A stretch of 64,000 nucleotides of DNA from Octopus bimaculoides (GCF_001194135.2 NC_069001.1:37058165-37122164), one strand, 5' to 3'. Shown: positions 1,023-55,414, counted from the first letter of the stretch. The notes: a model not told the origin generated them from the sequence alone. Made by a program: numbers and translations.

Positions 1023-1041
1023 TATCCGGTTGAGCATGCGC
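1023..1041 (-). promoter_or_regulatory. Conserved ZNF-cluster upstream element, copy 1 (Z0)
   Basis: TATCCGGTTGAGCATGCGC on plus strand; ~265 bp from the exon-1 donor. Confidence 0.75.
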
Positions 1042-2499
1042 TGCGCAGAGGGACGTATGTAAACATAAAACGCACATGCTTGAGTGCGTTCACACTCAAC
1101 CCTCCATACAAAGACAGTCAGACAGGCAATAAACATATATAGGTATAGCTACACAACTACGATCCTTACAGACTTCGTTTCGTTACGACTTTCTAAGAAA
1201 TGGATATTTTTTTTTCATGAAAATTTTATCGAAATTCGTTTCAAATAGTGTACTATAACGGAATTTGCTCTAAAAACTTTTATGAGGTGTACGAGTGAAG
1301 TTTCGGATAATACACACAACTTATTTTGTTGTGCCTGGGGAGAGTCATTCTCTTTTAGTGTCTTATTACACACGCACTGGTAAAATTTCTACTCATTAAT
1401 TTATTTTTCCTGAAATTTTCGTTGCGTCTGGCAACCTTTAATAGTCATTGAAAGTCAACGACTATTGAAAAGGTCCCAGATATCATATAGGACAGAACTT
1501 GCCCCTGGGTCACCATTCTCAAAATAAATACAAGAAGTGGTTGAAGTCTTACTGATAGGGCACACTACATTTGTCTCATGGGTCTGGAATAACCATGGAA
1601 ACAGCTCCTTACCCTATACAAGTGAAATTACTAGTGTATAATTTGAAGGTGATAAAAGATATTGCCAGGACTTTTGGCTTCCAACAAACACATGGTTTTG
1701 GAACAATCATAGATGGTAGTGGGATGGATTAGGAAAGAAAATATGACATATTTCTCCAAAACTTTTTTAACAAATTTTGTTTTTTGTCGTTGAAGAAATA
1801 GGTTAACGTGATTCCACAAATTTAGTAGAATTCCAAACTGTATCTCAGTTGCATGAGTAATGTAAGCCTTCGAGTTACCATTATTTGTTTTTGATTATCT
1901 TCAATAACAACATATCAACAAAGATGTTCCTTTATTAATCAGAAAAGGAAGCAATTAAAGTACAAATACAAGAGAACTCCAGTTTTATTTCATTTTGAAT
2001 TTAAGAAAGGTTACAAAGGATGGTGAAGATTTTGGGCTTCAAAACCTAGAGAATACAAGCTTGAGAAAATGTGGTGATATCTTGTATGGCAGAAATGTCC
2101 AACCGACGCCAACATAGGAAAATGAATAAAAACACGGGAGACATTTAATCGTAAACTATACCAGACTGTGCATTTAGGATCAGTTCAAGATTAATTACAT
2201 TGACTTGATACATGCAATTAAAATTTAGTTTAACAATGCTTGAGAACTGATAAAACAACTCAAATCTTACGAACAATGAAATCATCCCTTTGATAAGATT
2301 CATACATAATAAACGTTACATGAACGAATATATAATGATATATTTATATTCTAATTTAGCATGACGAAATGTTTTCTAACATAACAAATGTTGTGATTGA
2401 GTTCCAGATTTATCAGTAGTTTCATCGATATTTACCAACAATATCAAATAAATCAATGCCATCTGTTCTGGAAACAATTACATGAGATATATACGAGTT

Positions 2500-2739
2500 T
2501 CCTGAAACAAGCATTTACTTATATATCACAGTGGTAAATTCTCACCACGGTACAGTTGTATTTATTATAGATGTTTGAAAGATTGTGATCACACATCCAA
2601 ATTTACCTTCCACTGTGTGTACATTTCTACAAGTAACTCTTTACATTGAAAAGTTTTTCTTTCTGTATGAAACCATGCATGTATAGTTGACAGTCTACCA
2701 GTAGAGAATGATTTACTACAAATATCACAGTGATATGCT
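2500..2739 (-). pseudogene. Decayed zinc-finger tail downstream of the Z1 stop
   Basis: The stop is GAG>TAG in the linker (GGT TAG), followed by CATATCACTGTGATATTTGTAGTAAATCATTCTCT and further eroded finger sequence. Confidence 0.7.
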
Positions 2740-4284
2740 CTAACCTGTATGAATACGCATGTGTCTAGTTAATTTATTTCTAATGTAGAAAGATTTGCCA
2801 CAAATTTCACAGCTATGTGCTTTTTCCCCTGTGTGAATAAATTTGTGTTTCAACAAGCTACCATTTTCAGAGAATGATTTGCCACATATATCACATTGGT
2901 AAGGTTTTTCACCTGTGTGAATGCGTCTGTGCCTATGTATGTCACTACTTACAGAGAATGATTTACCACAAATATCACAGTGATACGGTTTCTCACCTGT
3001 ATGGGTGCGTTTATGTTTAGTTAACTCACTGCTGCCACAAAATGCTTTACCACAGATATCACAATGATATGGTTTCTCTCCTGTATGAACACGGTTGTGA
3101 ATATTAGATGCACTTTTATCAGAGAAAGCTTTACCACAGATATCACAGCGGTATGGTTTTTCCCCTGTATGAATCCGTTTATGCCTATGTAATTGATCAC
3201 TTCGAGAGAATAATTTACCACAGATCTCACATTTAATTGACTTTTCTGCAACATGAATATATTTATGTGCAGTTAAGTTGCCATTTTCACAGAATGATTT
3301 ACCACAAATATCACAGTGATATGGTTTCTCTCCTGTATGAATTAATTTGTGCTTTGCTAAATTGCCATTTCCAGAGAATGATTTACCACAGATATCACAG
3401 TGATATGGTTTCTCACCAGTATGAATACGTTTGTGTATTGTTAAGTCACTACTTCTCGCAAATGATTTACCACAGATATTACAGTGGTATGGCTTCTCTC
3501 CTGTATGAATACGTCTGTGTTTAGTTAAGCCATCTCTGCAAGAGAATGATTTTCTACAAATATCGCATTGAAATGGTGTCTCACCTGTATGAATACGTTT
3601 GTGTGTGATTAATCCATTACCAGAGAAAAATGATTTGCCGCAGATATCACATTCATATGGCTTCTCTCCTGTATGAATACGCTTGTGTTTAGATAAGTCA
3701 TTACTTCCACAAAATGATTTACCACAAATATCACAGTGATACGGTCTCTCTCCTGTATGAATGCGTTTATGTCTAGTCAAGTCAACACTTCCATAAAAAC
3801 ATTTACCACATATATCGCAGCGATATGGTCTTTCTGATGTATGAATGTATTTGTGTCTTGTTAAGTAATAAGATGCAGAGAATGATTTACCACAGACATC
3901 ACACTCATATGGTTTCTCTCCCGTATGAATAGATGTGTGAACTGTCAATGCAGTCTTCGACAAGAATGTCTTACCACAGATATTACAATGGTATGGCTTG
4001 TCTTCTTTATGATACCGTTTGTGTCTAGTTAGGTGAATCTTTTGAGAGAATACTTTACCACAGTTATCACAGCGATACGGATTCTGTTCAGTATGAATAC
4101 GTTTGTGAATGGTTAGGCTGTATTTTTTAGAGAACGACTTACCACAGATGTCACAACAACATGTTTTCCCTTCCTCTGTACATATGTCATCAGCCTGTTT
4201 CTCATACGACTCATTATCCATTTTTTTTTCTTTGCCCACTGTTATTCGTATATTCTTATTTTGTTTTTTTGCAATATGAGACAT
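2740..4284 (-). CDS. C2H2 zinc-finger protein Z1, 17 fingers
   Basis: Uninterrupted CxxC..H..H repeats with TGEKP linkers. The track start at 4287 is TTG; the first ATG is 4284 and the family-conserved ATG (MDNE..) is 4221. Confidence 0.93.
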
Positions 4285-4713
4285 CAACTGAGATGTTTGT
4301 TAACATACGATGATGCCAGAAACTTGTTAGTAAATATTTAATTTGAATGCAAATTCCATATGTCCATATTCGAGGTAGTAATGCAGATGAAGTTTGCCGA
4401 TTTTCTCTGTACACAGAAAATAATGGATCCAGTCGGTTAGGCTGCTGCCAGATCAGAAATATTTCAATTCAATGATGAGCAATATTCTTGATGCATTTGA
4501 AGTAAAAAAAATTTGTCATGCATGTGTCATTTGGTATATCTGAAATAAAACAGAAACAGTATATAATATCGGAGATACTTAAAAATAGATTATTTTAATA
4601 AGCATCCTTTTGACAATTTAAAATTTTTATTACAAAGACAATTGATAAGATATCTTAATCAGACTTGTTCTATTGTACTCAGTGGTTTACAAATTTTTTA
4701 ATTTTTACCTCAT

Positions 4714-5737: not shown

Positions 5738-6837
5738 ATCTGGACCATTCTGTTTGAGAATTACATTAAGGGTATACATGTTTGTGGAATACTCAGCCAC
5801 TTAGACGTTAATTTCATTGTGAAGGTAATTCATTTGATCGAACCACTGAATGTTCATCGTCGAAACCGATGGAAAACCCATCATGTATGTATGTATGAAA
5901 GGTTCACGAAACAAGACCAAAAAATCACAACAATATATCTAAACAAAATAACAATAGTAAAAAAAGTACATCAGCATAAAACAGATTTCTGTATATGTCT
6001 ATGTTTGGATAATCGCGTGTGTGTGTGTGTGCATGACTGTATATGTGTGTGTCGGTGACCGTAGCTGTCAAGAGAAAGTCGGTCTTGAACATCAAAGAAT
6101 GCCCAGATATGAATATCTCTCAACACAAGTAAAGCAGTGGATAGAAATTAGCATTGTGTTTGTGAGAGATGTTACTTGATGAAAACTTATTGTTATGATT
6201 GTGCGAATAAGGACGACAAATTGGCAGAGCTAGAGAGAAAATGCTTACAACTACACTTTCACATTTCTCATTACATATGTTTTGAACTTGAGAAAAGTAG
6301 GTTCCAACACTTTCTTCTCTGTAGTCATCTATTGTTATTCATAAACGTTGCTCTGTTTTGATTGTGTAGATATGTGATCAAAGCCAGGTTGTTTTCATGG
6401 AAGTCACGAATATTACGGCAGATCAGTTAAAAGGAAAAGGATTGAATGAAGAAATATCAATACACATACCTCGTTTAAATCGTATGTAATATCAGGAAGT
6501 TCATGATGTGTTGATGAATGGCAAAGATTTTGTAACAGGATGACAGATTCCCGCACTGGATGGGTGCTGCTCGCATCCTTCACATCAAATATTAATTGAA
6601 GAAAGAATCAAGAGTTTTCGTTAATTTCAACAGTATACACATTTATTCTTTGATTCGCAATATAAACCATTTCCTTCCTGTGGGCGAATCGGCAGAAGCC
6701 TAGTGGAATGAGTCAATCTTGTCCGTTCATGCATAGCGGGGATGCGCCGAGGTAGCAGCTCGGGAGAGCTGCTGGAGACACGTCTGTATCGTTCAGCTGC
6801 TAGCGTCCAAAAGAGAATTTAGCTGTTGCTAGTTTTC

Positions 6838-6880
6838 TGCGCATGCGCAAACTTCCGGCAGGCCTTCCAAGATGACGTCA
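6838..6880. promoter_or_regulatory. Housekeeping-type motif cluster: NRF1 palindrome, ETS site, CRE
   Basis: TGCGCATGCGCA 6838-6849, ACTTCCGG 6851-6858, TGACGTCA 6873-6880, in a CpG-richer patch between the Z1 element and the Z1 exon-1 donor. Confidence 0.55.
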
Positions 6881-7025
6881 CTACAATTTGCACATATAGT
6901 CATATGATAATATGGTACTTTGCCATGGAATCCTTGTTTGACGTTATGTGAAATGTTTTCAAATCTTTGCGTTTAGAATGAAGGTTTAATTTACATTTTA
7001 AAAAATTACATCGTAGTGTCGTATG

Positions 7026-7046
7026 CATATCCGGTTGAGCATGCGC
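7026..7046 (-). promoter_or_regulatory. Conserved upstream element, copy 2 (Z1)
   Basis: CATATCCGGTTGAGCATGCGC; exon-1 donor ACGAG|GTATGT at 6470/6469; acceptor at 4541-4540. Confidence 0.75.
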
Positions 7047-8157: not shown

Positions 8158-9306
<1,149 letters not shown>

Positions 9307-10013: not shown

Positions 10014-10045
<32 letters not shown>

Positions 10046-11280
10046 NNNNNNNNNNNNNNNNNNNNNNNNNNNNNNNNNNNNNNNNNNNNNNNNNNNNNNN
10101 NNNNNNNNNNNNNNNNNNNNNNNNNNNNNNNNNNNNNNTATATATACATACACACACACACAAGCTTCTATCCATGAAGCATAGAGTGGGACTGAAACTG
10201 AAACGATGTCAGAAATTGAACCCGGCCTTACTTGCACAATCTCATACACACGTATATATATCATTACACTTTACCATTTTGTCTTGACGTAAAGTAATAA
10301 CAAGTCTAGATGTGACTTCAGATATGTTGTCTTCTGAGACTACACATTCAATATTACCTGGGTGCACAATTATATTGGCTTGGTGCCTAAATTTTATTCA
10401 ACAAAAACAATAACAATATTTAACAAAAACGTTTTTAAATTGATGGTCTGACCGTTTGCCAAGCAAATGGGAAGCAGTAATTGAAGTAGATGGTGAATAT
10501 GCTCCGGAATAATCATTTAAAGATGTTTTTGTTTCATGTTGTTGTTTTCGTTGAAAAAAAGCCGCAATAATTATGCACCAACCCAATACCATATCAAGAA
10601 TCAAATGTAGCAAACAAAATACAATTTCAAAAGAAATGATATATTTCGTTGTTCTTTATGAACTTCCAACCATCTTAAAATTTTCAGAATAACCGTGGAA
10701 TTTTCCATGGGTACTGCTAGTGTAAACGTTAAGGTAGATATATGTATGCATTGCATACTCCTACTCCGGAGAACTCTAGTTATCCGATCCTTTTAGCTAT
10801 TATACTTTATTACTTTACAAAGATAATTCATCTTACGCTCCTCGAAGTTTTTGCAAAAAAGAAAAAGAAAAAAAGGTACAATTACTTTTATGCTCTCGTT
10901 GCAACCCCGCCAGGTTTGATTGAGCAGCTGATCTGTTGTCCAGTTTAGGTTGCTTACAGGGATGTTGTTACAAATTTCATGAGAGATTAAACAAAAGAAA
11001 AACTTCATAATGATCAAAGTATAAAAAAGAAATTGAGGCAATTATAAACAAAAAATACCTTGAATAAATGACAGGTATTCGAAAGTTAGTAATGGTGGCG
11101 ATATATGTTACTGAACAGAGAAGAGTCAGTACAATGTAGATATCATATAACTTCAGATACATATGACTATTTTTCCATTACTTTATGTTTGAAATTAAAT
11201 AAAATAATTCTTTAGATTGACTTGAAACTAGTTAATGGATATTTTATGACATTCCTCACCCAAGACGGGCGGTGCAAAGT

Positions 11281-11302
11281 CAATATCCGGTTGAACATGC
11301 GC
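11281..11302 (-). promoter_or_regulatory. Conserved upstream element, copy 3 (Z2)
   Basis: CAATATCCGGTTGAACATGCGC (full consensus); donor TCAAG|GTATTT at 11059/11058; acceptor at 9527-9526. Confidence 0.8.
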
Positions 11303-13929: not shown

Positions 13930-15045
13930 TCAATTACATAGTTTTTCTCCCGTATGAATACACTTGTGCCTAGCTAAGCTACCTGTGTGGGAGAATGATT
14001 TATTGCAGATAGCACAGTGGTATGGTTTCTCACCTGTATGAATGCGTTTGTGTCTAGTTGCATTACTACTTTTAGAAAAGGTTTTACCACAGATATCACA
14101 GCGATATGGCTTCTCACCAGTATGAATACGTTTGTGTTTAGTTAAGTGACTTCTTTCAGAGAAAAATTTATCACAGACATCACAGGGAAATGGCTTCTGT
14201 CCTGTATGAATACGTTTGTGTTTTGCTAAGTTACCTGGATCAGATAATGATTTACCACAGATGTCACAGTGATATGGTTTCTCTCCAGTATGAATGTGTC
14301 TGTGGACAGTTAATTCCCCACTTGCAACAAATGCTTTACCACAGATATCACAGAGGTATGGCTTTTCTCCTGTATGAATGCGTTTATGGATAGTTAATTG
14401 ACTATTTGCAGAGAATGATTTACCACAGATATCACAGTGATATGGCTTCTCTCCTGTATGGATGCGTTTGTGACTGGTTAAGTGACTACTTCCAGTGAAT
14501 GACTTACCACAGATATCACAATGGTATGGTTTCTCTCCAGTATGAATGCGTGTGTGGGTAGTTAATTCACTACTTCCAGAGAATGATTTACCACAAATAT
14601 CACAGTGATATGGTTTCTCTCCAGTATGAATGCGTTTGTGGATAGTTAAGGCATTTCTATGAGAGAATAATTTCCTACAGATATCACATTGGTATGGTTT
14701 CTCTCCTGTATGGGTACGTATGTGAGTAGTCAAGTCACTACTTCGATAGAATGATTTGCTACAAATATCACAGTGATGTGGTTTCTCCCCAGTATGAATA
14801 CGTTTGTGTTTAGTTAAGACACTTTCTTCAAAGAAAGATTTACTACAAATATCACAATGATATGGTCTCTCTCCTGTATGAAAGCATTTGTGAGCAATAA
14901 GGTTACTATTTTGAGAGAATGATTTACCACACATATCACAGTGATATGATGTTTTCCCCCTGTCTTTCAGCATTTCCTCACAAAAATCCATAGTTTCAGA
15001 CTCTGTTTTGCATTTAACCTGGCTGTTTTGCAATTCATTTTCCAT
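13930..15045 (-). CDS. C2H2 zinc-finger protein Z3, 12 fingers
   Basis: The track start at 15081 is TTG; the conserved ATG ([13 protein letters not shown]) is at 15045; intact array. Confidence 0.94.
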
Positions 15046-15468
15046 AGTTACTTTCCCTTTGACACTTCTGTTATATTTCAAACAACTGTGATCTTCCTCG
15101 ATACATCACTATATCACAAATTTCAAATATGTGTCAAATTCTTCTGAGGATGCCAAATTACCTTGTCACATTCTGAAATAATGGAGAAAGAGTGTAAGAC
15201 ATAGGGATTACTTAAAAGCAGAGAATCAACAGTTGAAAATTTTCTACAGTGAGCAGGAAGTAATTAAGTTGGTTATAGAGGCAGTAGAAGTTGCTTCAAG
15301 GGTCAGAAATGTGAGCCCTGGTGGGTAGTTACTGATTGGAAACAAGATATGGCTCGGTGGAACCGAAATGAAACCAGAAGTGATGACAGTGACATCCCGT
15401 AATTGCAATTCAACACTATAGGACATACCAATGCAGCCAATACATAAACATACATATATTTAATAGCC

Positions 15469-16284: not shown

Positions 16285-16723
16285 AACTATAAAATAGTGG
16301 ATGTTAACATTCTTCTGAGTCCAGAGAGGTCACTGATTGTCATAGAGTCACCGGTAAAATGTGATTAAACCCACGTTTAAAGGGGTGCAACGAATTTGAT
16401 GACATCAAACAAAACGAAACATAATATCAATGAAAGATGGGGGAAAAACAGGAGGAAATCAAGAGGTCAACATGAACAAAAGATACTCTAAGTATGAATT
16501 ACAACAAATTTTTTGAGGAAATCGATGACAGTGGGAATGTGTTAACCTGAATGCAGAACTAGTACTACATGAATAATGCAATATAATAGGTATATGTAAA
16601 TATTACAGTACAGTAAATAAATAGGATTACTTTACCGTGATTCAGCTAACAAAAATATTCTTTGCATGGTTGAGATTGGAATAAAAATATTGTTTAGCTG
16701 TCAATCGGAGTGATGCTTTCTGT

Positions 16724-16745
16724 CAATATCCGGTTGAACATGCGC
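16724..16745 (-). promoter_or_regulatory. Conserved upstream element, copy 4 (Z3)
   Basis: CAATATCCGGTTGAACATGCGC; a partial second copy CCGGTTGAGCA at 16770-16780. Confidence 0.8.
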
Positions 16746-20187: not shown

Positions 20188-21059
20188 AGTTATTATTCCT
20201 TTAGCACTGCTTTAGTTTATATTTCCATCAACTGTAAATCGTTTTTTAAGAATGAAGATACCACAAACTCTTTGTAGATGTTTCCAAGTTTATTCCAGAC
20301 AGTGAAGTAGAATTTTGCTGATAATCTCAGTTCACAAGGAATATTTCACACCAATTCAAACATAGATTTATACACACAGGTTGTATCTGGAGAGCCCAAT
20401 ATCTTCCTCCAGTCTTTAAAAGTTGATAAATATTGTCCATACATCGGATATTTCTGAAATAATAGAGAAACAATTTAAGTGAAAGAGGATATTTAAAAGT
20501 AGGCACAGCATTGGAAAATTTACTACATTTCTAAATTGATAAACTGGAGATATAAACATTTATATGGACAATCGAGGTTTACTTGAAATATACATATTTT
20601 CAAACTACAGTTACATCCTAAGGCTGTGTAATATGTCAACTTAAAGAAAGTAGTTGTAGACAGACGAAAGTAAAGCCTTATCAAGGCCCGTAACTCTCAA
20701 ATGATGACACCACTAGCAATAATAAACAACGATTTCACTGAAAATATATCACAACACCTTCTGATTCTCTAACACACACACATATATATATATATACGGC
20801 GATCTTTATGTATATACACTCGCACATATATATAAGCAGCCCAACAGCAGTTCGTAACATTCTGTTCTGTTGTTTTTTTTATAGCCCTAGGTCAGTCCTG
20901 GCTGAGCAGACTTGTGACCAAATATTGTTTTTAGGGGAGTCACGAATTTTATGACAAAACATTAACCAAAGAAACAATACAATGATAAAAAAAAAAAAAC
21001 ACCGATAATATCAAGAAATCAGCGACAAAAAATACCTAATATAAATCCTTTCAAGAAAG

Positions 21060-21170: not shown

Positions 21171-21490
21171 CTGGTACACCTCGTATAAATAACAATGTCA
21201 GGAAGACTGATCGCGGACAAATGTATTACTGAAGCGATAATTAGTGTTTATATATATATATATTTATTTGTTATAATGTTATATATATATAACATTATAA
21301 AATATATATATAATATGATGTATAAATATGATTACCTGGCACTGTCATGGTATTAGCTGTCAGAAGTGAAGGAAGACAGTGCCGATTACCTTTCTATCAG
21401 CATCTATCTCACGCGAAATGATTTCTTTACAAATATGTAATTTAATTATGCGTATAATTACAGTAATCTTCGGCTTAAAGTGTCTGTAGT

Positions 21491-21512
21491 CAATATCCGG
21501 TTGAACATGCGC
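21491..21512 (-). promoter_or_regulatory. Conserved upstream element, copy 5 (Z4)
   Basis: CAATATCCGGTTGAACATGCGC; donor ACGAG|GTGTAC at 21180/21179; acceptor at 20455-20454. Confidence 0.8.
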
Positions 21513-22554
21513 ATATTCAACCAGAAATTCACTTTGGACAACCAACAAGCACCACAGTAACGAAAACAATATTCTGTCAAAGACATCGATCACATACTTG
21601 TAGGCTGTTTGTGTGTCTGACTCAGGCAGAATTAGGAGAGAAAAAAAAAAAGGCAATCTCTCGTTTTTGGTCTCAAACTTGCGATGATTGCTTGTGAATT
21701 TCTGTAAAATGTTTTATTTATTTAGTTTTGTTTTCATGACATGTAGAAGGCGACATTAGCTTTGAAGTCTGAGAGAAATGAAACAAACGCTATCGCCCCC
21801 ACCCCCGCTGTTTTCATGTTGATGACTTGAACAGTGAAACATTCGCACAATGTGTTTATATGTATTTATGTATATACCAAAGATAATGGTTGTGCGTGCG
21901 CATGAGCGTGTTCAGCTCTATGTATTTGTATTCACTCACACTCGCACAATGAATATATGTACGTGTGTATGAAAGATAATGGTTGTACGTGTGTGTTTCT
22001 GTTCTGTTTTCAATTATTTAAATTCTTCCTCTGAATCAGAAGCTGATTTCTAACAAATATACAAAGCAGGATCGTTGGAAAGAACATAATAAAACCAATG
22101 TCGCATTTTAAACTTGAGAAAAGCCTTGAAAACTTATAATGTGCAAGTTATGTATGTGTGCGTGTGTGTGTGTACATGTATATGTTTTGTGCATCTCTGT
22201 GTATGTGGCCAGGGTTCGTTCTTACCTACTTAATCTATGTAAAATCCGGAAACTTTGCTGCGTATGTAAAATCCAGGTTAGCATGCACTTTTCTGTTTTA
22301 AAACAGTTTAAGTAAATTTACGAAACGAAATCAATGTCGAAAAAGCCGTATTAATGATAACAGACGATTTATTATTATGATTTGTTTGGAATAAAATGTC
22401 ATTGTTTGTGTGGTAGTAATTTTTTCTTTCTTTTGGTTCAAACTCTTGGTTTAGTTAAAAAACAAAACAAAACATTAAACAAAATTTGGCTGCCACTTTT
22501 CAATTTTTGTTTCAATTGATTTCATAATGTGAAAATGTGTGTGTATAGACACAA

Positions 22555-28815: not shown

Positions 28816-29231
28816 CAAGAAATGAAAAAAAAAAAGGGTGGGGTTAGGCAAAAGTTTCGGTAAGTTATTTTAAGAAATATAATTTTAAAATTTCTTTACT
28901 ACTACAGAATCATAATCTTACATGCTGCAAAAATATAAATCTGAAGAAATTGTCGAAAAAGATACGAAGAAACAAAATCGTTTACACGGTTCTTCGACAA
29001 ATACTCTGTTATATATATATATATATATGAATGAAAGCAGGAAAAAAGATGCTTGCAATAAATAAAATACCTCGTATAATATGTTTGTGTGTGTTGATGA
29101 ATAGAAGGTGACTAACAGAAATATATATACGTGTGTATATGATGATATGGAAGGTAGGTTTAATGTTGCGTGCAAAATTGACTCCAAAACAGATGGAAAA
29201 GATTATTTTGTCTAAGGTGGCAATCTGAGAT

Positions 29232-29253
29232 CAATATCCGGTTGAACATGCGC
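29232..29253 (-). promoter_or_regulatory. Conserved upstream element, copy 6 (between divergent Z5 and Z6)
   Basis: CAATATCCGGTTGAACATGCGC; Z5 donor ACGAG|GTATTT at 29071/29070; acceptor at 26579-26578. Confidence 0.8.
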
Positions 29254-31189
29254 CTTGGCGATTTGCCAGCAGAAGCATGTCTCTGCTACATACATACTCA
29301 TATGCGCACACATACGTACACCCAGCTAATATAGCTATTTATCTATCTATTTATAATACAGGGGAAACCGTTTACTGTAATCGTAGACATTATTATCAGT
29401 CGGTTATTGATATCTAAAAATATTCATCCCAAAGTAATCACAAGTAGTATTTATATACTTTCGGATGAAGACAGTCAGCCGTCACTCGCGATAGACTATA
29501 GCTTGATAACGTGTACCGTGCTTTCACTAATTGTTTTAGGTACTTATGAAGTAGCGAGCATTAACACACCATCGGTTCTTCATCCTTGACCCAGCGACAC
29601 GTCTGCGATGTGAAAGTTGGAGGGTGAGTGAGAGGTGCATGATAATTCGACTGGCTCTCTTTGAAGTCGAATAGAATGTTACAACGTGAAAGAAAAAAAG
29701 TAATCGAACGCCCGACCGTAGACTCATGAGCTAAATACTCTAACCAATAGGCCAAATGTCTCTGTAAGACCCTTCTACCTCCCATTTCGTTACCTTATGC
29801 CTTATCATTCAGCGGACATCCCATAATTCAACTTCCGTTGTGTCAGTATACAAAGATTTTATATCATTTTCAAACTATGAATGACTTTCTGTAAAGAACT
29901 GTCATTTATTCTGTGATAGCGTTCTGTGAACCCAATTCCATTGACAAGGTATATTTATCTTTAACCCTTTATCTAAACGTCTGCCTACAGAACTTATGCA
30001 CAAACATTATTAGCTTCCAATTGTTGGCGAAAACCAACAACTGGAAGCTAATAATGTATAAAGGCCAAGCTACTTTCTTCCAGTTCAAACGTCTTTACTG
30101 AACTATTTTTAGATTTGTATTAATTTATTTTCATTTAACTGTCTTTTCTTCGTTCATTTATTTTATGTTTGTTTTTACTGAGTAACAGTGTAACTAAAGT
30201 TACTGGTCGAATGGAAAGTCGCTTCAGGTCCCTCACTACCATTAAATAAAGTTGAGGACGTAGGCCTTATTCGCTGCTTTCTTGGTAAGGATTTTATGTG
30301 TGCAGATTTCTCAAACCCATTTCTTTTAAACTGGCAAGTGTTGCTGTTGTCTGATCAGTCCGTCTGATTATTTCCACCCCTCATAGAGTGATATCTGTGA
30401 AACCAAGTTAAGTAAAACTTCTGCAACACTCCCAGCTTGTTGTTGAGTGATGGAAAGAGAAAATCTCGCATCGTAACTGACAATGTTTCCTTCATACATT
30501 ATCGCCAAGCTCAGTTCATAACAAACACATGCAAAGTTGTTCTGTAGGACTAACTACTGTTACATTGTACTCAAATAGTAAATATAAGTGTTTTGAGTAA
30601 CTTGGTGTGTCTTCTAACTTGCACCGGTTCAATAGCCTCCAATAAAGAGCAACAAGGTAAGGACATTAGAACCATTTGACTCTGATGTAAATATCGAAAA
30701 CCTTTGAAGATGATCTAAAAAAATCGGATTAGTCCCCTCTGTGAGACTGTGTAAAACGACTGAATCCAGCTCAGGATCCTGACCTGACAATCGAATTTTT
30801 CGCTGTCTTGGTTCATGAGCTAGGGTTGGCGACTGCGATGTACAGTGATGTTCTCTGCTTTCTGAGAGCCAGTTTGATTTGTACAAGACCGACAGCTTAG
30901 TTGGATCCATCATACATCAGCCACAAGTTCTTTGTGCAGCATAGTGCTGTTTTCTACTGGAATTCAGAGTTTGTAATGTTGGAATTAATGAATGATGTTT
31001 ATGTTGCAAAAGTACCACATGTTTTTCCCTCTACAATAGTGTTGAGCTAAGTCCTCTAAGATAACCAGAAGACTGGCTCCAAACTGGTCCTATGATTATT
31101 TCTATTTATTTCTAGAAGTAGGATGCACTGCCATAGATAGTACTTCTGAGCTACTTCTATTATGTTTCTGCATCTCCCATTTGTGATTG

Positions 31190-39025: not shown

Positions 39026-40783
39026 AATTATTCTTCTCTGACCACTTCTCTTTTTCTCGTATTTTCTTAATTATTTCTGCTGCTATATTTAAATCACACA
39101 TAACTTTTGTTGATATTTGAAGATATTGCAAACTCCTTTGTAAATTTCTCCAAGTCTAATTAAAATGCAACCTAATCTTGAACATATTCCATAGAGAAAT
39201 TTTTTGAATGATCTTAAGCTACAACAATAAATATTTCACTCCAGTTCTACGTTTATAGAAACGAAGTGATATCCATTCTGTATAACATCTTCCTTTACTT
39301 TTTAAAAGATAATCAATATTGATGGTACATCAGAAGTAAAAAGATGGTATGTCAATGTCATCTGATGTTTCTGAAATAAAAGAGAAACAGTGTAAGATAT
39401 AGGGGGGCATTATGTTATTTCCTACAATATCGGTTTAGTGAAACAATTTTTTTTTTTGAGCGGTACATACCCTTCTAACACGGTATATTCACAAACAATA
39501 AGGTGTAATTTGAGGGAAAATTTAGCAACAACTTGAAGCAGGTGAAATGCCAATGTCGTCACGTCGCTCCTGATGCTGTTTAGTACCACCTGTTGTTTTA
39601 TTAAATGAAAACAAACACTCCTTATTGATGAACAAAAAAAAAAGATTGTTATAACATTAAACTAAAAAAATACGCATATAATTGAGATTAATGACGACAT
39701 TTGAGTTGGTGGAGAATAGCTTGGTCTTTTTCCAATATTCGCTTCCAATTGTTGGTTAAAAAAAGGTAAATTTTGATAAATGAAACGCGCTTATCAAAAT
39801 TTACCAAAAAATGTAGACTGTTTGTAAGTATTGTAGGTAGACGTCAAGATAATGGGATAAATGTACCTTGTCAATGGAATTGGGTTCACAGAACACTGTC
39901 ATGGAGAACAACAACAACACTGGAGTTGTATGGAATAAATAAGTCATTACTGGGATCCACGATGGAATGTGGGGGGGGGGGAAATACGAAACAGATATTT
40001 CCGGAAAATAGAGACGACGGAAGCAGAATCATTGGCTGTTCATTGGAAAAGTGAATGTAAAGATAAATGAGTACTGTTGACGAAAATATACATGCTTATA
40101 TTGGGTAACTGTGTGTTTACGTTTTAGCAAAAATACGAGAGTCAGTGATATGATGCGGTACAGAAAGTTAGTAAACACTTTGTACATCAGAATACGGAAC
40201 GGGGGTCAGGATATACGTTCATAATATCTGTGACAAATTCAATTTGTACAAACATGTGTTTCATTCAAGAATGTCAAAAGGAAATGTTTTGTTTTGTTCC
40301 AATAAAATAATTAATTTTTACAGTCTTTTAGAACGCTGAACAGTTGTGAGCAAAAGGGATTTTTTCATATGCGTAGTTAAAAAAAAATAGACTCCTAAAA
40401 CAAAAAAAAGTGAAAACTTTTGTGGGGGAGGATTAAAATTTTGAAATGCAGATTCGGAATCTCCGCAGTCGAAAATATGGGTTTCTGTAAGAAAAAAAAA
40501 TAATAATCGAAAGCGGGTGCAGTCGATATCCCTTACCTCTGCCAAGAAATCTAAACCGATGACATTTACTATCTGATATCTAAGCATTTACATATACTTC
40601 TTGCTTTCTCAGGATATGCAAGTCTTTTTTTTTTTTTTTTTTTTAATAGTTTTTCCCCCGGATGAATCTACTTTCATTATCATTTCTGCCGTTATACGCA
40701 CTTAACACAAAAGCTATATATTACACTAACACACATACACGTGTATATGTTTACGTTAGTGTGTTTGTTGACGCGTCGCTTCT

Positions 40784-40805
40784 GCGCATGTTCAGAGTGT
40801 ATTGA
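40784..40805 (+). promoter_or_regulatory. Conserved upstream element, copy 7 (inverted, diverged; between divergent Z7 and Z8)
   Basis: GCGCATGTTCAGAGTGTATTGA, followed by YY1-like GCCATCTT (40814-40821); Z8 donor CAG|GTATTG at 40953/40954; acceptor at 42410-42411. Confidence 0.65.
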
Positions 40806-41519
40806 TTCCAGCTGCCATCTTCGACTTAATCGCTACCATGTTCTCCTACAAAGTGTCATCCTATTACGATTGAAAGATAACTGAGTGACGGAAAAGTAGT
40901 CATATACACGACCACCATCACTGACTTCCTAATAATGCAGTGATTTATTTCAGGTATTGTTTTCTTCGTTCAATCGTTTTTTATTTTTCCATTTTCATCA
41001 GTATAACATTTGGTAAATGTGAAGAATTACAGCGTAATTTCGAAGATATGAGGAATGTATAAAAACGTGATTTACTGGAAATACTGAAATGAAATCGAAA
41101 CATTGTTTGCTACAGAGGTGATACTGTAATGGTTGTTAACAGGAATTCCATAATTTCTTACATCTTAAAATAAATGCCCCCCCCCCCCCACTTCTTAAGC
41201 CTGTAAATTTGTGTTCGATTTTCAGACATATCTCCGATGCGGAAGAAATGCATTCCGAAAATAATGTAACGCGAAATTAATTTTATCCATTCGATTCTTA
41301 TATAGCAAAGAGAGATACATTTTGACTGATTATTTTCGGGAAAACAAAAAAAAAGCAGGCAATACGACCACTTATATCCATGAAAATAACTATCTCGCAA
41401 CATTCATTGTACAGTATATGTTTAAAAAAAATATTTGAAGAGAAATAAGCTAAGGAATCATTAAAAATCATAACGGGTTATTAATGAGAGTTATTAAGAT
41501 GAATGACTCTAACGGAACG

Positions 41520-42719: not shown

Positions 42720-45221
42720 ATGGAAGATGAAATCTGTGAGAAGCCAATTAAAATTAAAACAGAATATGAAGCAGTTTACTTCCCTAATGAGATGCTAAAA
42801 AAAAAAGGAAAAACATATAGCTGTGATGTCTGTGGTAAATCTTTCTCAGAAACAGGAAACTTAACTACTCACAAACGTATTCATACAGGAGAGAAACCAT
42901 ATCACTGTGATATCTGTGGTAAATCATTTTCTGAAAGTGGTAGCTTAACTATACACATACGAACTCATACTGGAGAGAAACCATATTGCTGCAACATCTG
43001 TGGTAAATCATTTTCTGAAGCACGAAACTTAACCACACACAAACGTATACATACAGGTGAGAAGCCATATCACTGTAATATCTGTGGAAAATCATTTTCT
43101 GATAGTGGTACCTTCACTACTCATAGACGTATTCATACAGGAGAGAAACCATATCAATGTGATATCTGTGGTAAGTCATTCCCCCGAAAAAGTCCCCTTA
43201 CTACTCACAAAAATATCCATACAGGAGAAAAACCATACCATTGTAATATTTGTGGTAAAACATTTTCTCATAGAAGTGCCTCATATGTACACAAACGGGT
43301 TCACACAGGAGAGAGGCCATACCACTGTGAAATTTGTGGTAAATCATTTTCTTTAAAATCTTCCTTAACAACTCACAGAAATATTCATACAGGAGAGAAG
43401 CCATATCACTGTGATGTTTGTGGTAAATCATTCTCTCAAAAAAGTCACCTAAATACTCACAAAAATATTCATACAGGAGAGAAGCCTTACCACTGTGATA
43501 TCTGTGGTAAATCCTTCACAAATAAATGTAACCTAACTACTCACAGACGTATTCATACAGGAGAGAAGCCATATGACTGTGATGTTTGTCATAAATCATT
43601 CTCTCAAAAAGGTGAACTAACTATTCACATAAGGCTCCATACAGGAGGGAAACCATATCACTGTGATATCTGTGGAAAATCATTCTCACAAAAATGTCGC
43701 CTAACTAATCACAGAAGTATTCATACAGGGGAGAAACCATATCACTGTGATATTTGTGGTAAATCCTTTACAATTAAAAGTAACCTAATGAGACACAAAG
43801 ACATTCATAATGGAGTAAAACGATATTGCTGTAATGTCTGTGGTAAATCATTCGTTCAAAGTGGAGATTTAACTAAGCACAAACGTATTCATACAGGAGA
43901 GAAACCGTATCACTGTGATATCTGTGGTAAATCTTGCTCCACAAGTAGTGACTTAATTAAACACAAACGTGTTCATACAGGTGAAAAACCATACCACTGT
44001 GATATCTGTGGTAAATCCTTCTCTGAAAGTAGTTCCTTAGCTCCCCACAAGCGTGTTCATACAGGTGAGAGGCCATATCACTGTGATATCTGTGGTAAAT
44101 CATTTTCTGAAAGTGGTAGCTTAACTAAGCACAAAAACGTTCATACAGGAGAGAAGCCATATCACTGCAATATTTGTGGTAAATCATTTTCTCAAAATAA
44201 GGACTTAACAAAACACACATGCATTCCTACAAAGGAAAGATCATTCTCTGGAAGCTGTGATGTAACTAGACCCAAGTATTCTAATTCATATGAGAAACCA
44301 TATCAGTGTGAAGTCTGTGGTAAATCATTTTCACATAGAATCACCCTAACTATGCACAAACGCATTCATACAGGAGAAAGACCATATCAATGTGATACTT
44401 GTGGGAGAACATTCTTACGTAGAGGTAATCTCACCAATCACATACGTATACATACACAAGAGAAACCATATCACTGTAGCATCTGTGGTAAATCATTCTC
44501 AGAAAAAAATATCTTAACTCTGCACAAACTCATTCATGCAGGGCAGAAACCATATGACTGTGATATATGCAGCAAGTCATTCTCTCGGTGTTATGACTTA
44601 ACTATACACAAACGCATTCATACAGGAGTTAAGCTACATCACTGTGATGTTTGTGGAAAATCATTCACGCAGAAAAGTGTCTTAGCTATGCACAAACGTA
44701 TTCATACAATAGAAAAGCCATACAATTGTGATGTCTGCAGTATATCATTTTCTCAAAAAAATGTCTTGACATTGCATAAACGTATCCATACAGGAGAGAA
44801 ACCATATTCCTGCAATATCTGTGGTAAATCTTTCTCCCGGTCATATGTCTTAATTACTCATAAGCGTGTCCATACAGGAGAGAAGCCATATCACTGTGAG
44901 ATATGTGGTAAGTCTTTCTCTCATGGAAATGCATTAACTGTACACAAACGCACTCATACAGGAGACAAACCATTCCAATGTAATATTTGTGGGTACTCCT
45001 TCTTTCAAAGTAGTGTCTTAACTATTCACAAACGCACTCATACTGGTGAGAAGCCATATGAATGTGATATCTGTGAGAAGTCATTCTCTCAAAGAAGTAC
45101 TTTCAACAATCACAAATATGTTCATAGAGCAGAGAAGCTGTTCCTCTGTGATATCTGTGGTAAATCATTCTCTAGAATTATTCAGTTAACTAGACATAGA
45201 CGTCTTCATACGGAAAAGTAA
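42720..45221 (+). CDS. C2H2 zinc-finger protein Z8, about 29 finger units (units 17-18 broken)
   Basis: ATG start with [15 protein letters not shown] leader; 833 aa; decayed fingers continue after the TAA to ~45410. Confidence 0.95.
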
Positions 45222-48310: not shown

Positions 48311-48349
48311 AGCTTAACACGTCTTCTCAAACACAGCAAATCACCAGAA

Positions 48350-51919: not shown

Positions 51920-53440
51920 TCACTCCTCTACCATATGAATACGTTTGTGTCTAACTAAATTATTTGAGTCAGAGAACAATTTACCACAGATATTGCAGTG
52001 AAATGGTTTCTCTCTTGTATGAATACGTTTGTGATTAGTTAATCCACCACGATGAGAGAATGATTTACCACAGATGTCACAATGATATGGCTTCTCTCTA
52101 GTATGAGTACGTTTATGGTCAGTTAACTGACCACTTCGAGAGAAGGATTTACCACAGATATCACAGTCATATGGCTTCTCTCCTGTATGAATGCGTTTGT
52201 GCATAGTTAAATCACCATTTCTAGAGAACAATTTACCACAGATATTGCAGTGAAATGGTTTCTCTCTTGTATGAATACGCTTGTGATTAGTTAATCCACC
52301 ACACTGAGAGAATGATTTACCACAGATGTCACAATGATATGGCTTCTCTCCTGTATGAGTACGTTTATGGTCAGTTAACTGACCACTTTGAGAGAAGGAT
52401 TTACCACAGATATCACAGTTATATGGCTTCTCTCCTGTATGAATGCGTTTGTGCATAGTTAAATCACCAGTTCTAGAGAACAATTTACCACAGATATTGC
52501 AGTGAAATGGTTTTTCTCTTGTATGAATACGTATGTGATTAGTTAATCCACCACACTGAGAGAATGATTTACCACAGATGTCACAATGATATGGCTTCTC
52601 TCCTGTATGAGTACGTTTATGGTCAGTTAACTGACCACTTACAGAGAATGATTTACCACAGATATCACAGTGATATGGCTTCTCCCCTGTATGAATGCGC
52701 TTGTGTCTAGTTAAGTCCTTTGTTTGAGAGAATGTTTTACCACAAATATCACAATGATATGGCTTCTCCCCTGTATGGATTCGTTTGTGTGTAGGTAAAT
52801 GACTACTTCTAGAGAATGATCTACCACAGATATCACAGTGATATGGCTTCTCAGTATGGGTGAATTTGTGAGCTCTTAGGGCTACAGTTGTAATGAATGA
52901 TTCACCACCAACATCACAATGATATGGTTTCTCTCCTGTATGGATTCGTTTGTGTGTAGTTAAGTAACTACCACGAGAAAAGGATTTGCCACAGATGTCA
53001 CACTGATATGGCTTCTCACCTGTATGAGTTCGTCTGTGAGTACTTAAGCCACCACTCTGAGAGAATGATTTACCACAGATATCACAGTGATATGGCTTCT
53101 CTCCTGTATGAATGCGTTTGTGTATAGTTAAGACCTGTGTTTGAGAGAATGTTTTACCACAAATATCACAATGATATGGCTTCTCCCCTGTATGGATTCG
53201 TTTGTGAGTAGGTAAATGACTACTTCTAGAGAATGATTTACCACAGATATCACAGTGATATGGCTTCTCTCCTGTATGAATGCGTTTGTGCGTAGTTAAA
53301 TCACCAGTTCTAGAGAATGATTTATTACAGATATCACAATGATATGGTTTTACTCCTTTATGGATACTTCTGTGAGTATCTAGGTAATGTTTTTGAGAGA
53401 ATGATTTATCACAAATATTACAGTGGTATGTTTTACACAT
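51920..53440 (-). CDS. C2H2 zinc-finger protein Z9, 18 finger units (unit 7 defective); leader peptide disrupted
   Basis: The track start at 53458 is TTG; the first in-frame ATG is 53440. The family ATG at 53510 is out of frame and stops after 13 codons. Confidence 0.85.
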
Positions 53441-53872
53441 CTTTATAAGAAAAAACAATTTCGGACTCTTATTTTATTTTAATTGGTGTTTTACATAATC
53501 CATTTTCCATTCTTCTTCTTTCACTCTTTGTTCTGTAAAGGAAAGTACAAAAATCCTTTTATGCCAATGACATCAGGTATTCTGAAATAATAGAGAAACA
53601 TTTAAGATATAGGGAATTCAACAGGGGAATACACATATTGATAAATTGTAAATATAAACTCAACTGATCAATCCTAGATATTTACAGACTATAGCTACAT
53701 CTTGAGACTGTCACATTATATAATGACAACGACTGCCCCATCCTCCAAAATTTCGGGCCTTGTGCCTTGAGTAGAAAAGAGTAAAGGTTCATCCTATCAA
53801 GGCCCGTAACTAGCAATAACTACACAACTAAAACGATGAGAACAATAACAATGACAAGTCCACGGAAGATAT

Positions 53873-54947
53873 AGGGCTTTCCTATAAGTAGGTTATCTCC
53901 CTTGGCTAGGCGGCGCTCCATGTAGACAAACTTCCGCAGACTATCCACGCTAGTGTTATTGTTTCGATGATTCAGCTATCGAAGTACTTACTGTGCCCAA
54001 GTTAAAGAAATATTTAAGATTATATGGACAGTATGTTACTGGAAGGAAGGCGGACTTGACTGAAAGGTATAAAAATTCTGTCAATGAAGAATGTCAACAA
54101 AGTAAATTCATCGGACGATACTTCAGACAGGAATAAGCAGAAGCTTATATCTCCTCTCGGTGAAGTATTGCCTGATATAATTTTAATCATCGGATTTTTT
54201 TAATATGCTAGACCACTGGTTCTAATTGATTAATATTAATTTCTACCCTTATTAATATATATATATATANNNNNNNNNNNNNNNNNNNNNNNNNNNNNNN
54301 NNNNNNNNNNNNNNNNNNNNNNNNNNNNNNNNNNNNNNNNNNNNNNNNNNNNNNNNNNNNNNNNNNNNNNNNNNNNNNNNNNNNNNNNNNNNNNNNNNNN
54401 NNNNNNNNNNNNNNNNNNNNNNNNNNNNNNNNNNNNNNNNNNNNNNNNNNNNNNNNNNNNNNNNNNNNNNNNNNNNNNNNNNNNNNNNNNNNNNNNNNNN
54501 NNNNNNNNNNNNNNNNNNNNNNNNNNNNNNNNNNNNNNNNNNNNNNNNNNNNNNNNNNNNNNNNNNNNNNNNNNNNNNNNNNNNNNNNNNNNNNNNNNNN
54601 NNNNNNNNNNNNNNNNNNNNNNNNNNNNNNNNNNNNNNNNNNNNNNNNNNNNNNNCGGATGGCAAGGGGTGATCTTTCGATGGCCCATTAAAATTGACGA
54701 AATGCTGGGAACACATTTGGCTATTTGCAGTGTAAACAAAGTCTTTCCTCACAAGTCTCGATCTCTGAAGCCAAATACGACGAATAGCTACGTTTGCAGG
54801 ATATCTATGTAGCGAAATAACTTTGCCGAACCGGTCAGTGCAGTATGTGAGTCGTCTGCGGAAGTTAAAGCAAGTCACTGAGCGTGCGTACATGTCATAT
54901 GGGAGAGTTCCAATCAGGGGTGATTAACAACCTTATAGGAACCCCCT
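53873..54947. mobile_element. THAP + SAP DNA transposon (ISL2EU/PIF-Harbinger-like) in Z9 intron, spanning a gap
   Basis: Imperfect TIRs AGGGCTTTCCTATAAG / CTTATAGGAACCCCCT flanked by AT (or TA); SAP-like frame on plus at 53975-54067; THAP domain on minus at 54893-54657. Confidence 0.7.
54657..54893 (-). CDS. THAP-type zinc-finger domain (transposase N-terminus), runs into the gap
   Basis: ATG..C....C..SLHRYP..W..MCSQHF..P pattern of THAP domains; open up to the N-run. Confidence 0.65.
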
Positions 54948-55392
54948 ATAACCCACAGATGCACCATCACGCTAACATTAGATACGTTAAACTACGCAGT
55001 AGAGAACGATAACATTCAGCCCTCTTTCCAAGAACGTGCTTCGTCGTTGTTTATAGCCCTAAGTTAATCCCGACTGAGCAGACCTGTGGGCAATGTCAAT
55101 TTCTTACCAGGGATGTCACAAATTTTATGACTGATCAAATAAGGAACATTGTGTTAATGAAAGTAGAAACGATGTTTGAAGGGGAAAATATCAATAAAAA
55201 TACCTCGTATTAATTACAACTGTTATCAGGAAGTCAGTGACGGTGGTGGCGTTGCTGAAGAGAATCATCTATAGATTATCATAGATAAATATATTATAAC
55301 ATTCAAACTTATTAATTATCCTTTAGAAATAAAGCGATCCACTTAAAATTCAAAGTAAGACTACAGCAACCATCAGGTTGAAAGGCCGAATT

Positions 55393-55414
55393 CAACTTCC
55401 GGTTGAACATGCGC
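55393..55414 (-). promoter_or_regulatory. Conserved upstream element, copy 8 (Z9)
   Basis: CAACTTCCGGTTGAACATGCGC (canonical ETS core variant); donor ACGAG|GTATTT at 55204/55203; acceptor at 53583-53582. Confidence 0.8.

What the first reader, a model, noticed from the sequence alone, without database searches (positions are those of the whole stretch)
1023..55414. One conserved 22-bp element per ZNF promoter: a candidate cluster-wide regulatory code
Seen: the near-invariant motif CAATATCCGGTTGA(A/G)CATGCGC occurs at 1023, 7026, 11281, 16724, 21491, 29232 and 55393, and inverted and diverged at 40784. Where a donor could be placed, it lies ~150-550 bp from a conserved exon-1 donor and is oriented the same way relative to the gene (sense GCGCATGTTCAACCGGATATTG), while flanking DNA is far more diverged. 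Knowledge: GCGCATG is half of the NRF1/EWG palindrome and ACCGGA(T/A) is an ETS-type core; the Z9 copy has the canonical ACCGGAAGT. Inference: a fixed-spacing NRF1-half + ETS composite, or the site of one unknown factor (possibly one of these ZNFs), co-regulates the whole family. I do not recognise it as a described element.
Basis: partly seen in the sequence, partly recalled or inferred. Interest (0 to 1): 0.85.

Follow-up and report, generated by a model that had tools for sequence, protein, structure and literature searches.

The report
Shared promoter element of octopus ZNFs
A 23-base DNA word stays almost unchanged upstream of each zinc-finger gene in one Octopus bimaculoides gene cluster while the DNA around it has mutated to randomness, so it is very probably a shared on/off switch for this local gene subfamily; no protein that binds it is known.

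Summary
GCGCATG[T/C]TCAACCGGA[T/A][A/G]T..A (gene sense) occurs seven times on the minus strand. An eighth, decayed copy lies on the plus strand at 40784. Chance expectation is zero.

The window is Octopus bimaculoides chromosome CM046621.1. Anchored on the motif, 17 of 23 positions are identical in all seven copies. The bases immediately outside are at random identity (0.28 against 0.27 expected). The other homologous non-coding blocks reach only about 67%.

Each copy lies 170–577 bp upstream of a conserved non-coding leader block with a donor, in the same orientation as the gene, inside a zone where CpG is not depleted. It tracks 5' ends, not the 3' ends of neighbouring genes. The two genes without their own copy use a different leader and sit head-to-head with a gene that has one.

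The element is not a dispersed repeat, tRNA, Rfam family or hairpin. It is absent from five other octopus ZNF loci (about 114 kb, three species), so it is specific to this subfamily, not family-wide.

Best reading: a promoter-proximal binding site kept by selection, compatible with an ETS site plus an NRF1-like half-site, or with one factor that has a long footprint. TSS position, binding and conservation across species are untested. The closest analogue is the ~22-bp protocadherin CSE. This is a new member of a known kind.

The parts
1019..1041 (-). Motif copy GCGCATGCTCAACCGGATACCAA. It serves a gene lying left of the window.
7024..7046 (-). Motif copy GCGCATGCTCAACCGGATATGCA, upstream of ZNF 2740-4287.
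11280..11302 (-). Motif copy (consensus GCGCATGTTCAACCGGATATTGA), upstream of ZNF 8158-9243.
16723..16745 (-). Motif copy (consensus), upstream of ZNF 13930-15081. A partial direct copy TGCTCAACCGG lies at 16766-16781.
21490..21512 (-). Motif copy (consensus), upstream of ZNF 18415-20187.
21509..21531 (+). Diverged inverted partner GCGCATATTCAACCAGAAATTCA. It shares the central GCGC with the copy at 21490-21512, giving a partial palindrome.
29231..29253 (-). Motif copy (consensus), upstream of ZNF 23686-26163. It lies about 0.7 kb from the type-B leader of the divergent gene 32595(+).
40784..40805 (+). Decayed copy GCGCATGTTCAGAGTGTATTGA (ACCGGA core lost), upstream of ZNF 42720-45221(+). It lies about 0.9 kb from the type-B leader of the divergent gene 37658(-).
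55392..55414 (-). Motif copy GCGCATGTTCAACCGGAAGTTGA (canonical ETS core), upstream of ZNF 51920-53458.
55186..55246 (-). Type-A leader block, best-preserved example: CCACCGTCACTGACTTCCT...ACGAG|GTATTTTTATTGATATTT, with the GT at 55203.
40912..40963 (+). Type-A leader block of gene 42720, with the GT at 40954.
11049..11098 (-). Type-A leader block of gene 8158, with the GT at 11058.
6458..6476 (-). Type-A donor context of gene 2740, with the GT at 6469.
747..765 (-). Type-A donor context of the gene left of the window, with the GT at 758 and the -1 base changed from G to T.
29060..29078 (-). Type-A donor context of gene 23686, with the GT at 29070.
21025..21043 (-). Type-A donor context of gene 18415, with the GT at 21035.
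29914..30185 (+). Type-B leader block of the motif-less gene 32595(+): ...CCATTGACAAG|GTATATTTATC.
39598..39901 (-). Type-B leader block of the motif-less gene 37658(-).
2740..4287 (-). Poly-C2H2 ZNF coding exon. The others are 8158-9243(-), 13930-15081(-), 18415-20187(-), 23686-26163(-), 32595-34004(+), 37658-39025(-), 42720-45221(+), 51920-53458(-) and 61617-63401(-).

Best explanation
The 23-bp word is a promoter-proximal cis-regulatory DNA element. It was inherited with the tandem-duplication unit of one local subfamily of Octopus bimaculoides C2H2-ZNF genes and has since been held almost invariant by purifying selection.

Proposed mechanism (inferred, not shown): one or more sequence-specific factors bind it upstream of the non-coding leader exon, in a 5' region where CpG is not depleted. 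Binding opens or positions the promoter, which gives the paralogues a common transcriptional input.

The sequence fits two readings. One is an ETS-type site (ACCGGAWRY) abutting an NRF1/P3A2-like GCGCA(T/C)G half-site. The other is a single factor with a long footprint, which would explain why the bridge bases TCA and the tail TATTGA are also constrained.

Shown: existence, copy number, orientation, position relative to the leader and donor, extreme conservation against random flanks, and the CpG context. Inferred: that the region is the promoter, that proteins bind the element, and that it co-regulates the genes.
For: - Copies: 7 intact plus 1 decayed, with 0 expected by chance. PWM scores are bimodal.
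- Conservation: positions 1-7, 9-17 and 23 are identical in all 21 pairs. The mean over 23 bp is 0.90. Flanks from -60 to -1 and from +24 to +90 are at 0.28, against a random expectation of 0.27, and the edges are abrupt.
- Context: in all-vs-all alignment of whole upstream regions, only three blocks are shared: the motif, the leader/donor block and the acceptor/5'UTR block. The other two average about 67% identity.
- Rank: motif words are the most widely shared non-coding 12-16-mers in the window.
- Position: the orientation is constant, 170-577 bp upstream of the leader donor. The CDS lies entirely in the large exon, so the upstream exon is a 5' leader.
- 5' ends, not 3' ends: the distance to the upstream neighbour's stop codon varies from 1.1 to 6.2 kb, and head-to-head pairs keep the element.
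- Link to the leader: genes that lack the motif also lack the type-A leader and share a type-B leader instead.
- CpG: o/e in the flanks is about 1.0, against 0.56 +/- 0.13 in random non-coding sets (at most 0.2% of sets reach it).
- Word specificity: GCGCATG occurs 11 times in 64 kb, 8 of them in the element. ACCGGAWRY occurs 8 times, all on the gene strand, 7 of them in the element.
- Local partial duplicates of the site (21509-21531 and 16766-16781) look like homotypic site turnover.
- From the literature: ETS/GABPA and NRF1 are chromatin-opening factors that set TSSs at CpG-island promoters (bioRxiv 10.64898/2026.05.04.722487).
Against: - No TSS, expression, accessibility or binding data could be obtained, so 'promoter' rests on gene anatomy and CpG content only.
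- The spacing to the leader donor is not fixed (170-577 bp).
- The DNA between motif and leader is unconstrained, so the element may sit a few hundred bp from the TSS.
- The NRF1 part is only a half-site.
- GGAT is a sub-optimal ETS core.
- The 40784 copy has lost the ACCGGA core, yet its gene keeps an 833-aa ORF.
- Some genes with perfect copies have damaged 5' coding ends (23686 has ATG changed to AGG; 51920 has an early stop).
- The orthologous locus in another species was not found, so conservation is shown only among paralogues.
- Four of the seven motif-gene links cross an assembly gap.
Confidence: 0.68

Rival explanations
1. Architectural or promoter-choice element. The word is bound by an insulator- or looping-type factor, as CTCF binds the protocadherin CSE. 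It would mark each paralogue's promoter for stochastic or enhancer-mediated choice, or act as a boundary between tandem units, rather than acting as a conventional activator site.
For: There is one ~22-23-bp element per tandem paralogue promoter, with a strict orientation. That matches the formal layout of the Pcdh CSE (PMC3333863; window data). It sits between every pair of neighbouring genes, including the head-to-head pairs. A footprint of 17-23 constrained bases suits a multi-finger protein.
Against: There is no sequence resemblance to CTCF or CSE motifs (comparison from memory). No distal enhancer copy was seen in the window. The orientation could simply reflect duplication history. There are no chromatin data.
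Confidence: 0.12
2. RNA-level element. Transcription starts upstream of the word, so it forms part of the 5' leader and acts in the RNA. It could be an RBP site (it contains GCAUG) or the target of a ~23-nt small RNA that controls the whole subfamily.
For: The length (23 nt) and strict strand-specificity fit an RNA target. The antisense strand would begin with U (UCAAUAUCCGG...). The leader exon is non-coding and partly conserved.
Against: No conserved promoter-like block lies upstream of the word, where identity is at the random level. The sequence between the word and the conserved leader block is unconstrained. The part that would pair with a small-RNA seed (GAUAUUGA) is the least conserved part of the element. 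There is no hairpin or precursor in either strand except for one palindromic copy. Rfam gave no match.
Confidence: 0.1
3. No present function. The identity reflects short-tract gene conversion, or a fragment of a mobile element carried along with the duplications.
For: All copies lie in one tandem cluster, where conversion is possible. MITE-like repeats exist in the window.
Against: The identity drops from 1.00 to the random level within one base on both sides in all 21 pairs, which is far shorter than known conversion tracts. There is a single copy per unit and no paired terminal repeats. The flanks do not align, so it is not part of a longer repeat. The only variation inside the element is at a few tolerated positions. 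Matches to the 17-mer in metagenomes are chance hits in GC-rich prokaryotic contigs.
Confidence: 0.05

Closest known systems
Conserved sequence element (CSE) of clustered protocadherin promoters (vertebrates)
   Same: It is a core motif of about 22 bp present once in the promoter in front of each tandemly arrayed paralogue. It is far more conserved among paralogues than the surrounding promoter DNA and is required for promoter activity (PMC3333863).
   Different: The sequence is different, with no CTCF-like motif. The genes here are ZNF transcription factors with a separate non-coding leader exon, not variable first exons spliced to shared constant exons. Binding factor, distance to the TSS and any promoter-choice behaviour are unknown here. 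The element covers one local subfamily (8 copies seen), not a whole family.
ETS + NRF1 sites of TATA-less / CpG-island promoters
   Same: The element contains ACCGGAWRY (once ACCGGAAGT) and GCGCA(T/C)G in a 5' region where CpG is not depleted. A separate stretch at 6835-6885 carries CRE + CCGGAAGT + the full GCGCATGCGC palindrome, showing that these words co-occur in octopus promoter-like DNA. ETS/GABPA and NRF1 open chromatin and position TSSs.
   Different: Only half of the NRF1 palindrome is present. The bridge (T)TCA and the tail TATTGA are also constrained, which generic ETS and NRF1 sites do not require. Ordinary ETS/NRF1 promoters do not keep a fixed 23-bp composite across paralogues.
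Shared promoter architecture of zebrafish chromosome-4 FiNZ zinc-finger genes
   Same: It is a lineage-specific, tandemly expanded ZNF family whose members share a recognisable promoter type that correlates with coordinated expression (PMC10547256, summarising Hadzhiev et al.).
   Different: There the shared feature is a TATA-box or sharp-peak architecture, not a 23-bp specific word, and expression data exist for it. Here there are none.

Membership tests
ETS binding site | A GGA(A/T) core within ACCGGAWRY | tested here: met
   All seven intact copies read ACCGGATAT, ACCGGATAC or ACCGGAAGT, and the variation stays within W/R/Y. The consensus occurs 8 times in the window, 7 of them in the element. 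The consensus itself is recalled from established knowledge.
ETS binding site | Bound by an ETS-domain protein | not testable with these tools
   This needs EMSA, DAP-seq or ChIP.
NRF1/Ewg/P3A2 site | The full palindrome GCGCATGCGC | tested here: not met
   Only GCGCATG is invariant. The copies match 8/10 (T variants) or 9/10 (C variants at 1019 and 7024) of the palindrome. The only exact palindrome in the window is at 6839, outside the element.
Protocadherin-type CSE (one conserved promoter word per tandem paralogue) | A word of about 22 bp, one per paralogue promoter, far more conserved than the flanks | tested here: met
   definition from PMC3333863
Protocadherin-type CSE (one conserved promoter word per tandem paralogue) | CTCF-type sequence and binding; role in promoter choice | not testable with these tools
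   No CTCF-like sequence was seen by eye. No PWM library or chromatin data were available here.
Promoter-proximal element | Lies within a few hundred bp upstream of the TSS | tested here: inconclusive
   It lies 170-577 bp upstream of the donor of a conserved non-coding leader exon, in a zone where CpG is not depleted. No transcript or TSS evidence could be retrieved.
Dispersed repeat / transposon fragment | Part of a longer repeated unit, or paired terminal repeats, with copies unrelated to genes | tested here: not met
   The flanks are at random identity. There is one copy per 5' region. It is absent from 114 kb of other octopus ZNF loci. A genome-wide census was not possible.
Structured or small-RNA gene (miRNA, tRNA, Rfam family) | A conserved hairpin or a match to a covariance model | tested here: not met
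   Rfam gave 0 matches and tRNA search gave 0. Fold z-scores range from -1.3 to +0.5, except for the palindromic copy.
Target site of a ZNF encoded in the same cluster | The predicted finger specificity matches the word | tested here: inconclusive
   With the crude canonical code, the best match is 11/23 against a null mean of 11.8. The method is too weak to exclude the idea.

The most novel reading that the evidence does not exclude
The 23-bp word is the recognition site of a lineage-specific multi-finger protein, possibly a member of the expanded octopus ZNF repertoire. That protein would control this ZNF subfamily as a unit, either by auto- or cross-regulatory feedback, or by a protocadherin-like system of promoter choice that gives neurons different ZNF subsets.
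Probability: 0.1. Interest if true: 0.8.

Novelty: new member of a known kind. Interest (0 to 1): 0.45.

Why it matters
Cephalopods expanded C2H2 zinc-finger genes massively, and nothing is known about how these clusters are controlled. A sharply defined 23-bp element under obvious selection gives a concrete handle:
- It can be used as bait to identify the binding factor.
- It can be scanned genome-wide to define a regulon.
- It can be mutated to test co-regulation.

It also shows that promoter types are modular within a single cluster: type-A leader plus motif against type-B leader. That can be used to reconstruct how the cluster grew. It does not by itself reveal a new kind of mechanism.

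Tried and rejected
- Transcript or TSS evidence. Exact-product look-ups for window ZNFs returned only the genome record, or nothing. The one Logan contig was genomic and from another subfamily.
- Orthologues.
  - A full-length ZNF query was swamped by vertebrate poly-ZNFs.
  - N-terminal profiles did recover octopus proteins.
  - The five loci fetched from them were O. sinensis L002 and L127 and O. vulgaris L003, L006 and L128. They share only the coding start, with no motif and no type-A leader, so they are other subfamilies and not orthologues.
- Extending the window. To the right, the promoter of gene 61617 falls in a 2.1-kb run of N, and the next gene has no motif. To the left, nothing was on record.
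- Metagenome scan for the 17-mer. It returned more than 120 hits, all in GC-rich prokaryotic contigs, and the next six bases match only at chance level. They are unrelated.
- Literature. The exact sequence appears in no paper, and the cephalopod genome and 3D-genome papers describe no shared ZNF promoter element.
- tRNA-like or primer-binding-site reading, and the miRNA or hairpin reading: rejected.
- 3'-end or terminator signal of the upstream neighbour: rejected, because the distances vary and head-to-head pairs keep the element.
- Other factor motifs were compared from memory only: Grainyhead AACCGGTT (7/8 match), a p53 half-site, ZNF143 SBS, Pax, CHR, REST and CTCF. None fits better than ETS plus the NRF1 half-site, and none could be tested.
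- Crude recognition-code prediction for the window's ZNFs: no signal.


Full report
**Source and genes.** The window is Octopus bimaculoides GCA_001194135.2, chromosome CM046621.1. Record coordinate equals window coordinate plus 37,058,164. It holds ten long ORFs that are all poly-C2H2 zinc-finger arrays, eight on the minus strand and two on the plus strand. In each gene the start codon (M-E-N/D-E-L-C-E...) lies just inside the large exon, directly after a conserved acceptor (...ATATAG|CAG). The whole protein is therefore encoded in one exon, and any upstream exon is a non-coding leader.

**The observation.** The 22-mer matches seven times on the + strand, with none expected by chance, and the 16-nt core is exact in all seven. 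In gene sense the consensus is GCGCATG[T/C]TCAACCGGA[T/A][A/G]T[T]GA. Four copies are identical over 23 bp. The eighth copy, at 40784 on the + strand, keeps GCGCATGTTCA and TATTGA but has lost ACCGGA. A PWM built from the seven copies gives 38-46 bits for them and 28 bits for an inverted partner abutting the 21490 copy. The next best score in 128 kb of both strands is below 9 bits. The six assembly gaps were located. None is within 370 bp of a copy. Three motif-to-ATG intervals are gap-free and four contain one gap in the putative intron.

**Is it more conserved than the neighbouring duplicated DNA?** Yes.
- In an ungapped comparison anchored on the motif, positions 1-7, 9-17 and 23 are identical in all 21 pairs.
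- The 60 bases upstream and the 67 bases downstream average 0.28 identity, against a random expectation of 0.27. The transition happens within one base.
- A multiple alignment of +/-300 bp shows the same picture.
- In sensitive all-vs-all alignments of the complete upstream regions, only three segments recur: the motif (a 23-26-bp island), a block 150-650 bp downstream of it, and the acceptor/5'UTR/N-terminal block.
- The latter two average about 67% identity where they can be aligned.
- The first 127 residues of the proteins are 51-70% identical.
- Motif words are the most widely shared non-coding 12-16-mers in the window. The only rival is an unrelated MITE-like repeat.

The 23 bp is therefore the most conserved non-coding sequence in the repeat unit. 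Short gene-conversion tracts or a dispersed repeat cannot explain an island with edges this sharp.

**Anatomy.** The second block reads ...CCACC(A/G)TCACTGACTTCCTGATAA...ACGAG|GTATTTTTATTGATATTT.... I read it as the 3' end of a non-coding leader exon, its donor and the start of the intron. This is an inference and has no RNA evidence behind it.
- The GT lies 170, 183, 211, 244, 283, 477 and 577 bp downstream of the first base of the motif.
- In gene 13930 the GT is lost.
- The element is always in the same orientation as its gene.
- Its distance to the stop codon of the next gene upstream varies from 1.1 to 6.2 kb, and it is retained where the neighbour points the other way. It therefore belongs to 5' ends, not 3' ends.

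**The two genes without their own copy.** Genes 32595(+) and 37658(-) also lack the type-A leader. They share a different leader-like block (type B): TGAYAGYGTTCTGTGAACCCAATTCCATTGACAAG|GTAYATTTATC at 29914-30185(+) and 39598-39901(-). Each is head-to-head with a motif-bearing gene, so a copy lies 0.7-0.9 kb upstream of the type-B leader in reverse orientation. The promoter of the tenth gene (61617) falls in a 2.1-kb run of N just beyond the window.

**Promoter-like context.** With the motif itself excluded, pooled CpG o/e in its flanks is about 1.0, against 0.56 +/- 0.13 for random non-coding sets from the window. At most 0.2% of random sets reach the observed value. The zone where CpG is not depleted runs from about -400 to +1000.

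**What it is not.**
- Rfam finds nothing and there are no tRNAs.
- The RNA folds of both strands are unremarkable, apart from the palindromic copy.
- The 17-mer occurs in metagenomes only as chance hits in GC-rich prokaryotic contigs.
- It is not a general octopus ZNF promoter word. Five other ZNF loci have neither the motif nor the type-A leader, although they share the N-terminal coding start. These are O. sinensis L002 and L127 and O. vulgaris L003, L006 and L128, about 114 kb in all.
- The next gene to the right of the window also has none.
- None of these loci is the orthologue of the window, so conservation across species remains untested.

**What might bind it.** From established consensus sequences (my own knowledge, not tested here):
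- ACCGGAWRY is the class-I ETS consensus. All intact copies fit it. The one copy that differs (TA changed to AG) becomes the optimal ACCGGAAGT.
- GCGCA(T/C)G is half of the NRF1/Ewg/P3A2 palindrome. The two C-variant copies match it at 9 of 10 positions.
- Both words are almost exclusive to the element in this window.
- A separate stretch at 6835-6885 carries TGACGTCA, CCGGAAGT and the full GCGCATGCGC. This shows that these site types co-occur in octopus promoter-like DNA.
- ETS/GABPA and NRF1 are chromatin-opening factors that position TSSs in CpG-island promoters.
- A plain ETS plus half-NRF1 reading does not explain the invariant bridge TCA or the conserved tail TATTGA. A cooperative composite or a single long-footprint factor is equally possible.
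- AACCGGAT is also 7/8 of the Grainyhead site.
- A crude canonical recognition-code test found no window-encoded ZNF predicted to bind the word: 11/23 against a null mean of 11.8. This test is uninformative rather than negative.
- Local partial duplicates of the site look like ordinary turnover of binding sites. They are the inverted copy at 21509-21531, the direct copy at 16766-16781 and a decayed relic at 22262-22292.

**Comparison with known systems.** The closest formal analogue is the ~22-bp conserved sequence element present in the promoter of every clustered protocadherin variable exon and bound by CTCF (PMC3333863). The layout is the same, but the sequence, gene structure and scope differ. 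Zebrafish FiNZ ZNF genes also share a promoter architecture (PMC10547256). No paper in the searchable library contains the sequence or describes a shared promoter element for cephalopod ZNFs.

**Verdict.** The best explanation is a promoter-proximal cis-regulatory element of one local ZNF subfamily, maintained by selection (confidence about 0.68). It is a new member of a known kind. It is of moderate interest, mainly as an experimentally tractable entry point into the regulation of cephalopod ZNF clusters.

Noticed in passing
window 6835-6885 (-): TGACGTCA...CCGGAAGTTTGCGCATGCGC: a CRE, a canonical ETS site and the only exact NRF1 palindrome in the window. They sit inside a GC-richer insert of about 300 bp between the 7046 motif and the leader donor of gene 2740. 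This looks like a second, housekeeping-type promoter module.
   Followed up: partly
window 21490-21531: The motif plus a diverged inverted partner share the central ATGCGCAT, forming a 42-bp partial palindrome. As RNA or DNA it would fold into a hairpin (z = -3.8), unlike every other copy.
   Followed up: partly
window 16766-16781 (-) and 22262-22292 (-): A partial direct copy (TGCTCAACCGG) lies 37 bp upstream of the 16745 motif. A decayed relic (GTGCATGCTAACCTGGATTTTA) lies about 750 bp upstream of the 21512 motif.
   Followed up: no
window 29914-30185 (+) and 39598-39901 (-): The two ZNF genes without their own motif share a second type of leader block with a clear donor (CCATTGACAAG|GTAYATTTATC). 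The two head-to-head pairs (23686/32595 and 37658/42720) are mirror images, which suggests an inverted duplication of a divergent gene pair.
   Followed up: partly
window 17767-18415, 56140-56843, 57826-58346: MITE- or foldback-like elements with nested inverted repeats (outer arms GGATCTTGTTCAAAACGGGGGC..., inner arms ...AACCAATCACTGACGTCTATTCAG...). They are unrelated to the motif.
   Followed up: partly
window 26238, 53470-53510, 20050-20100, 16486: Several motif-bearing genes have damaged 5' parts. In gene 23686 the start codon is AGG. Gene 51920 has a stop after 13 codons and the ORF then restarts at MCKTYHC. The first finger of gene 18415 is broken (CDIFKRSF). Gene 13930 has lost the leader donor GT and has an ACCGGAAGT at 15885(-) inside its intron.
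   Followed up: no
window 55228-55246, 40912-40930 (type-A leader): The conserved leader block contains a reverse-oriented canonical ETS word (ACTTCCTG = CAGGAAGT) in several paralogues.
   Followed up: no
L005 7279-9398 (equivalent to window 64001-66120): A 2.1-kb run of N starts immediately after the window's right end and hides the promoter of gene 61617.
   Followed up: yes
L128 7722-8666 and 13963-14907 (O. vulgaris OX597834.1): Two 314-aa ORFs with a DDE_Tnp_IS1595 transposase domain are interleaved with ZNF genes in an O. vulgaris cluster.
   Followed up: no
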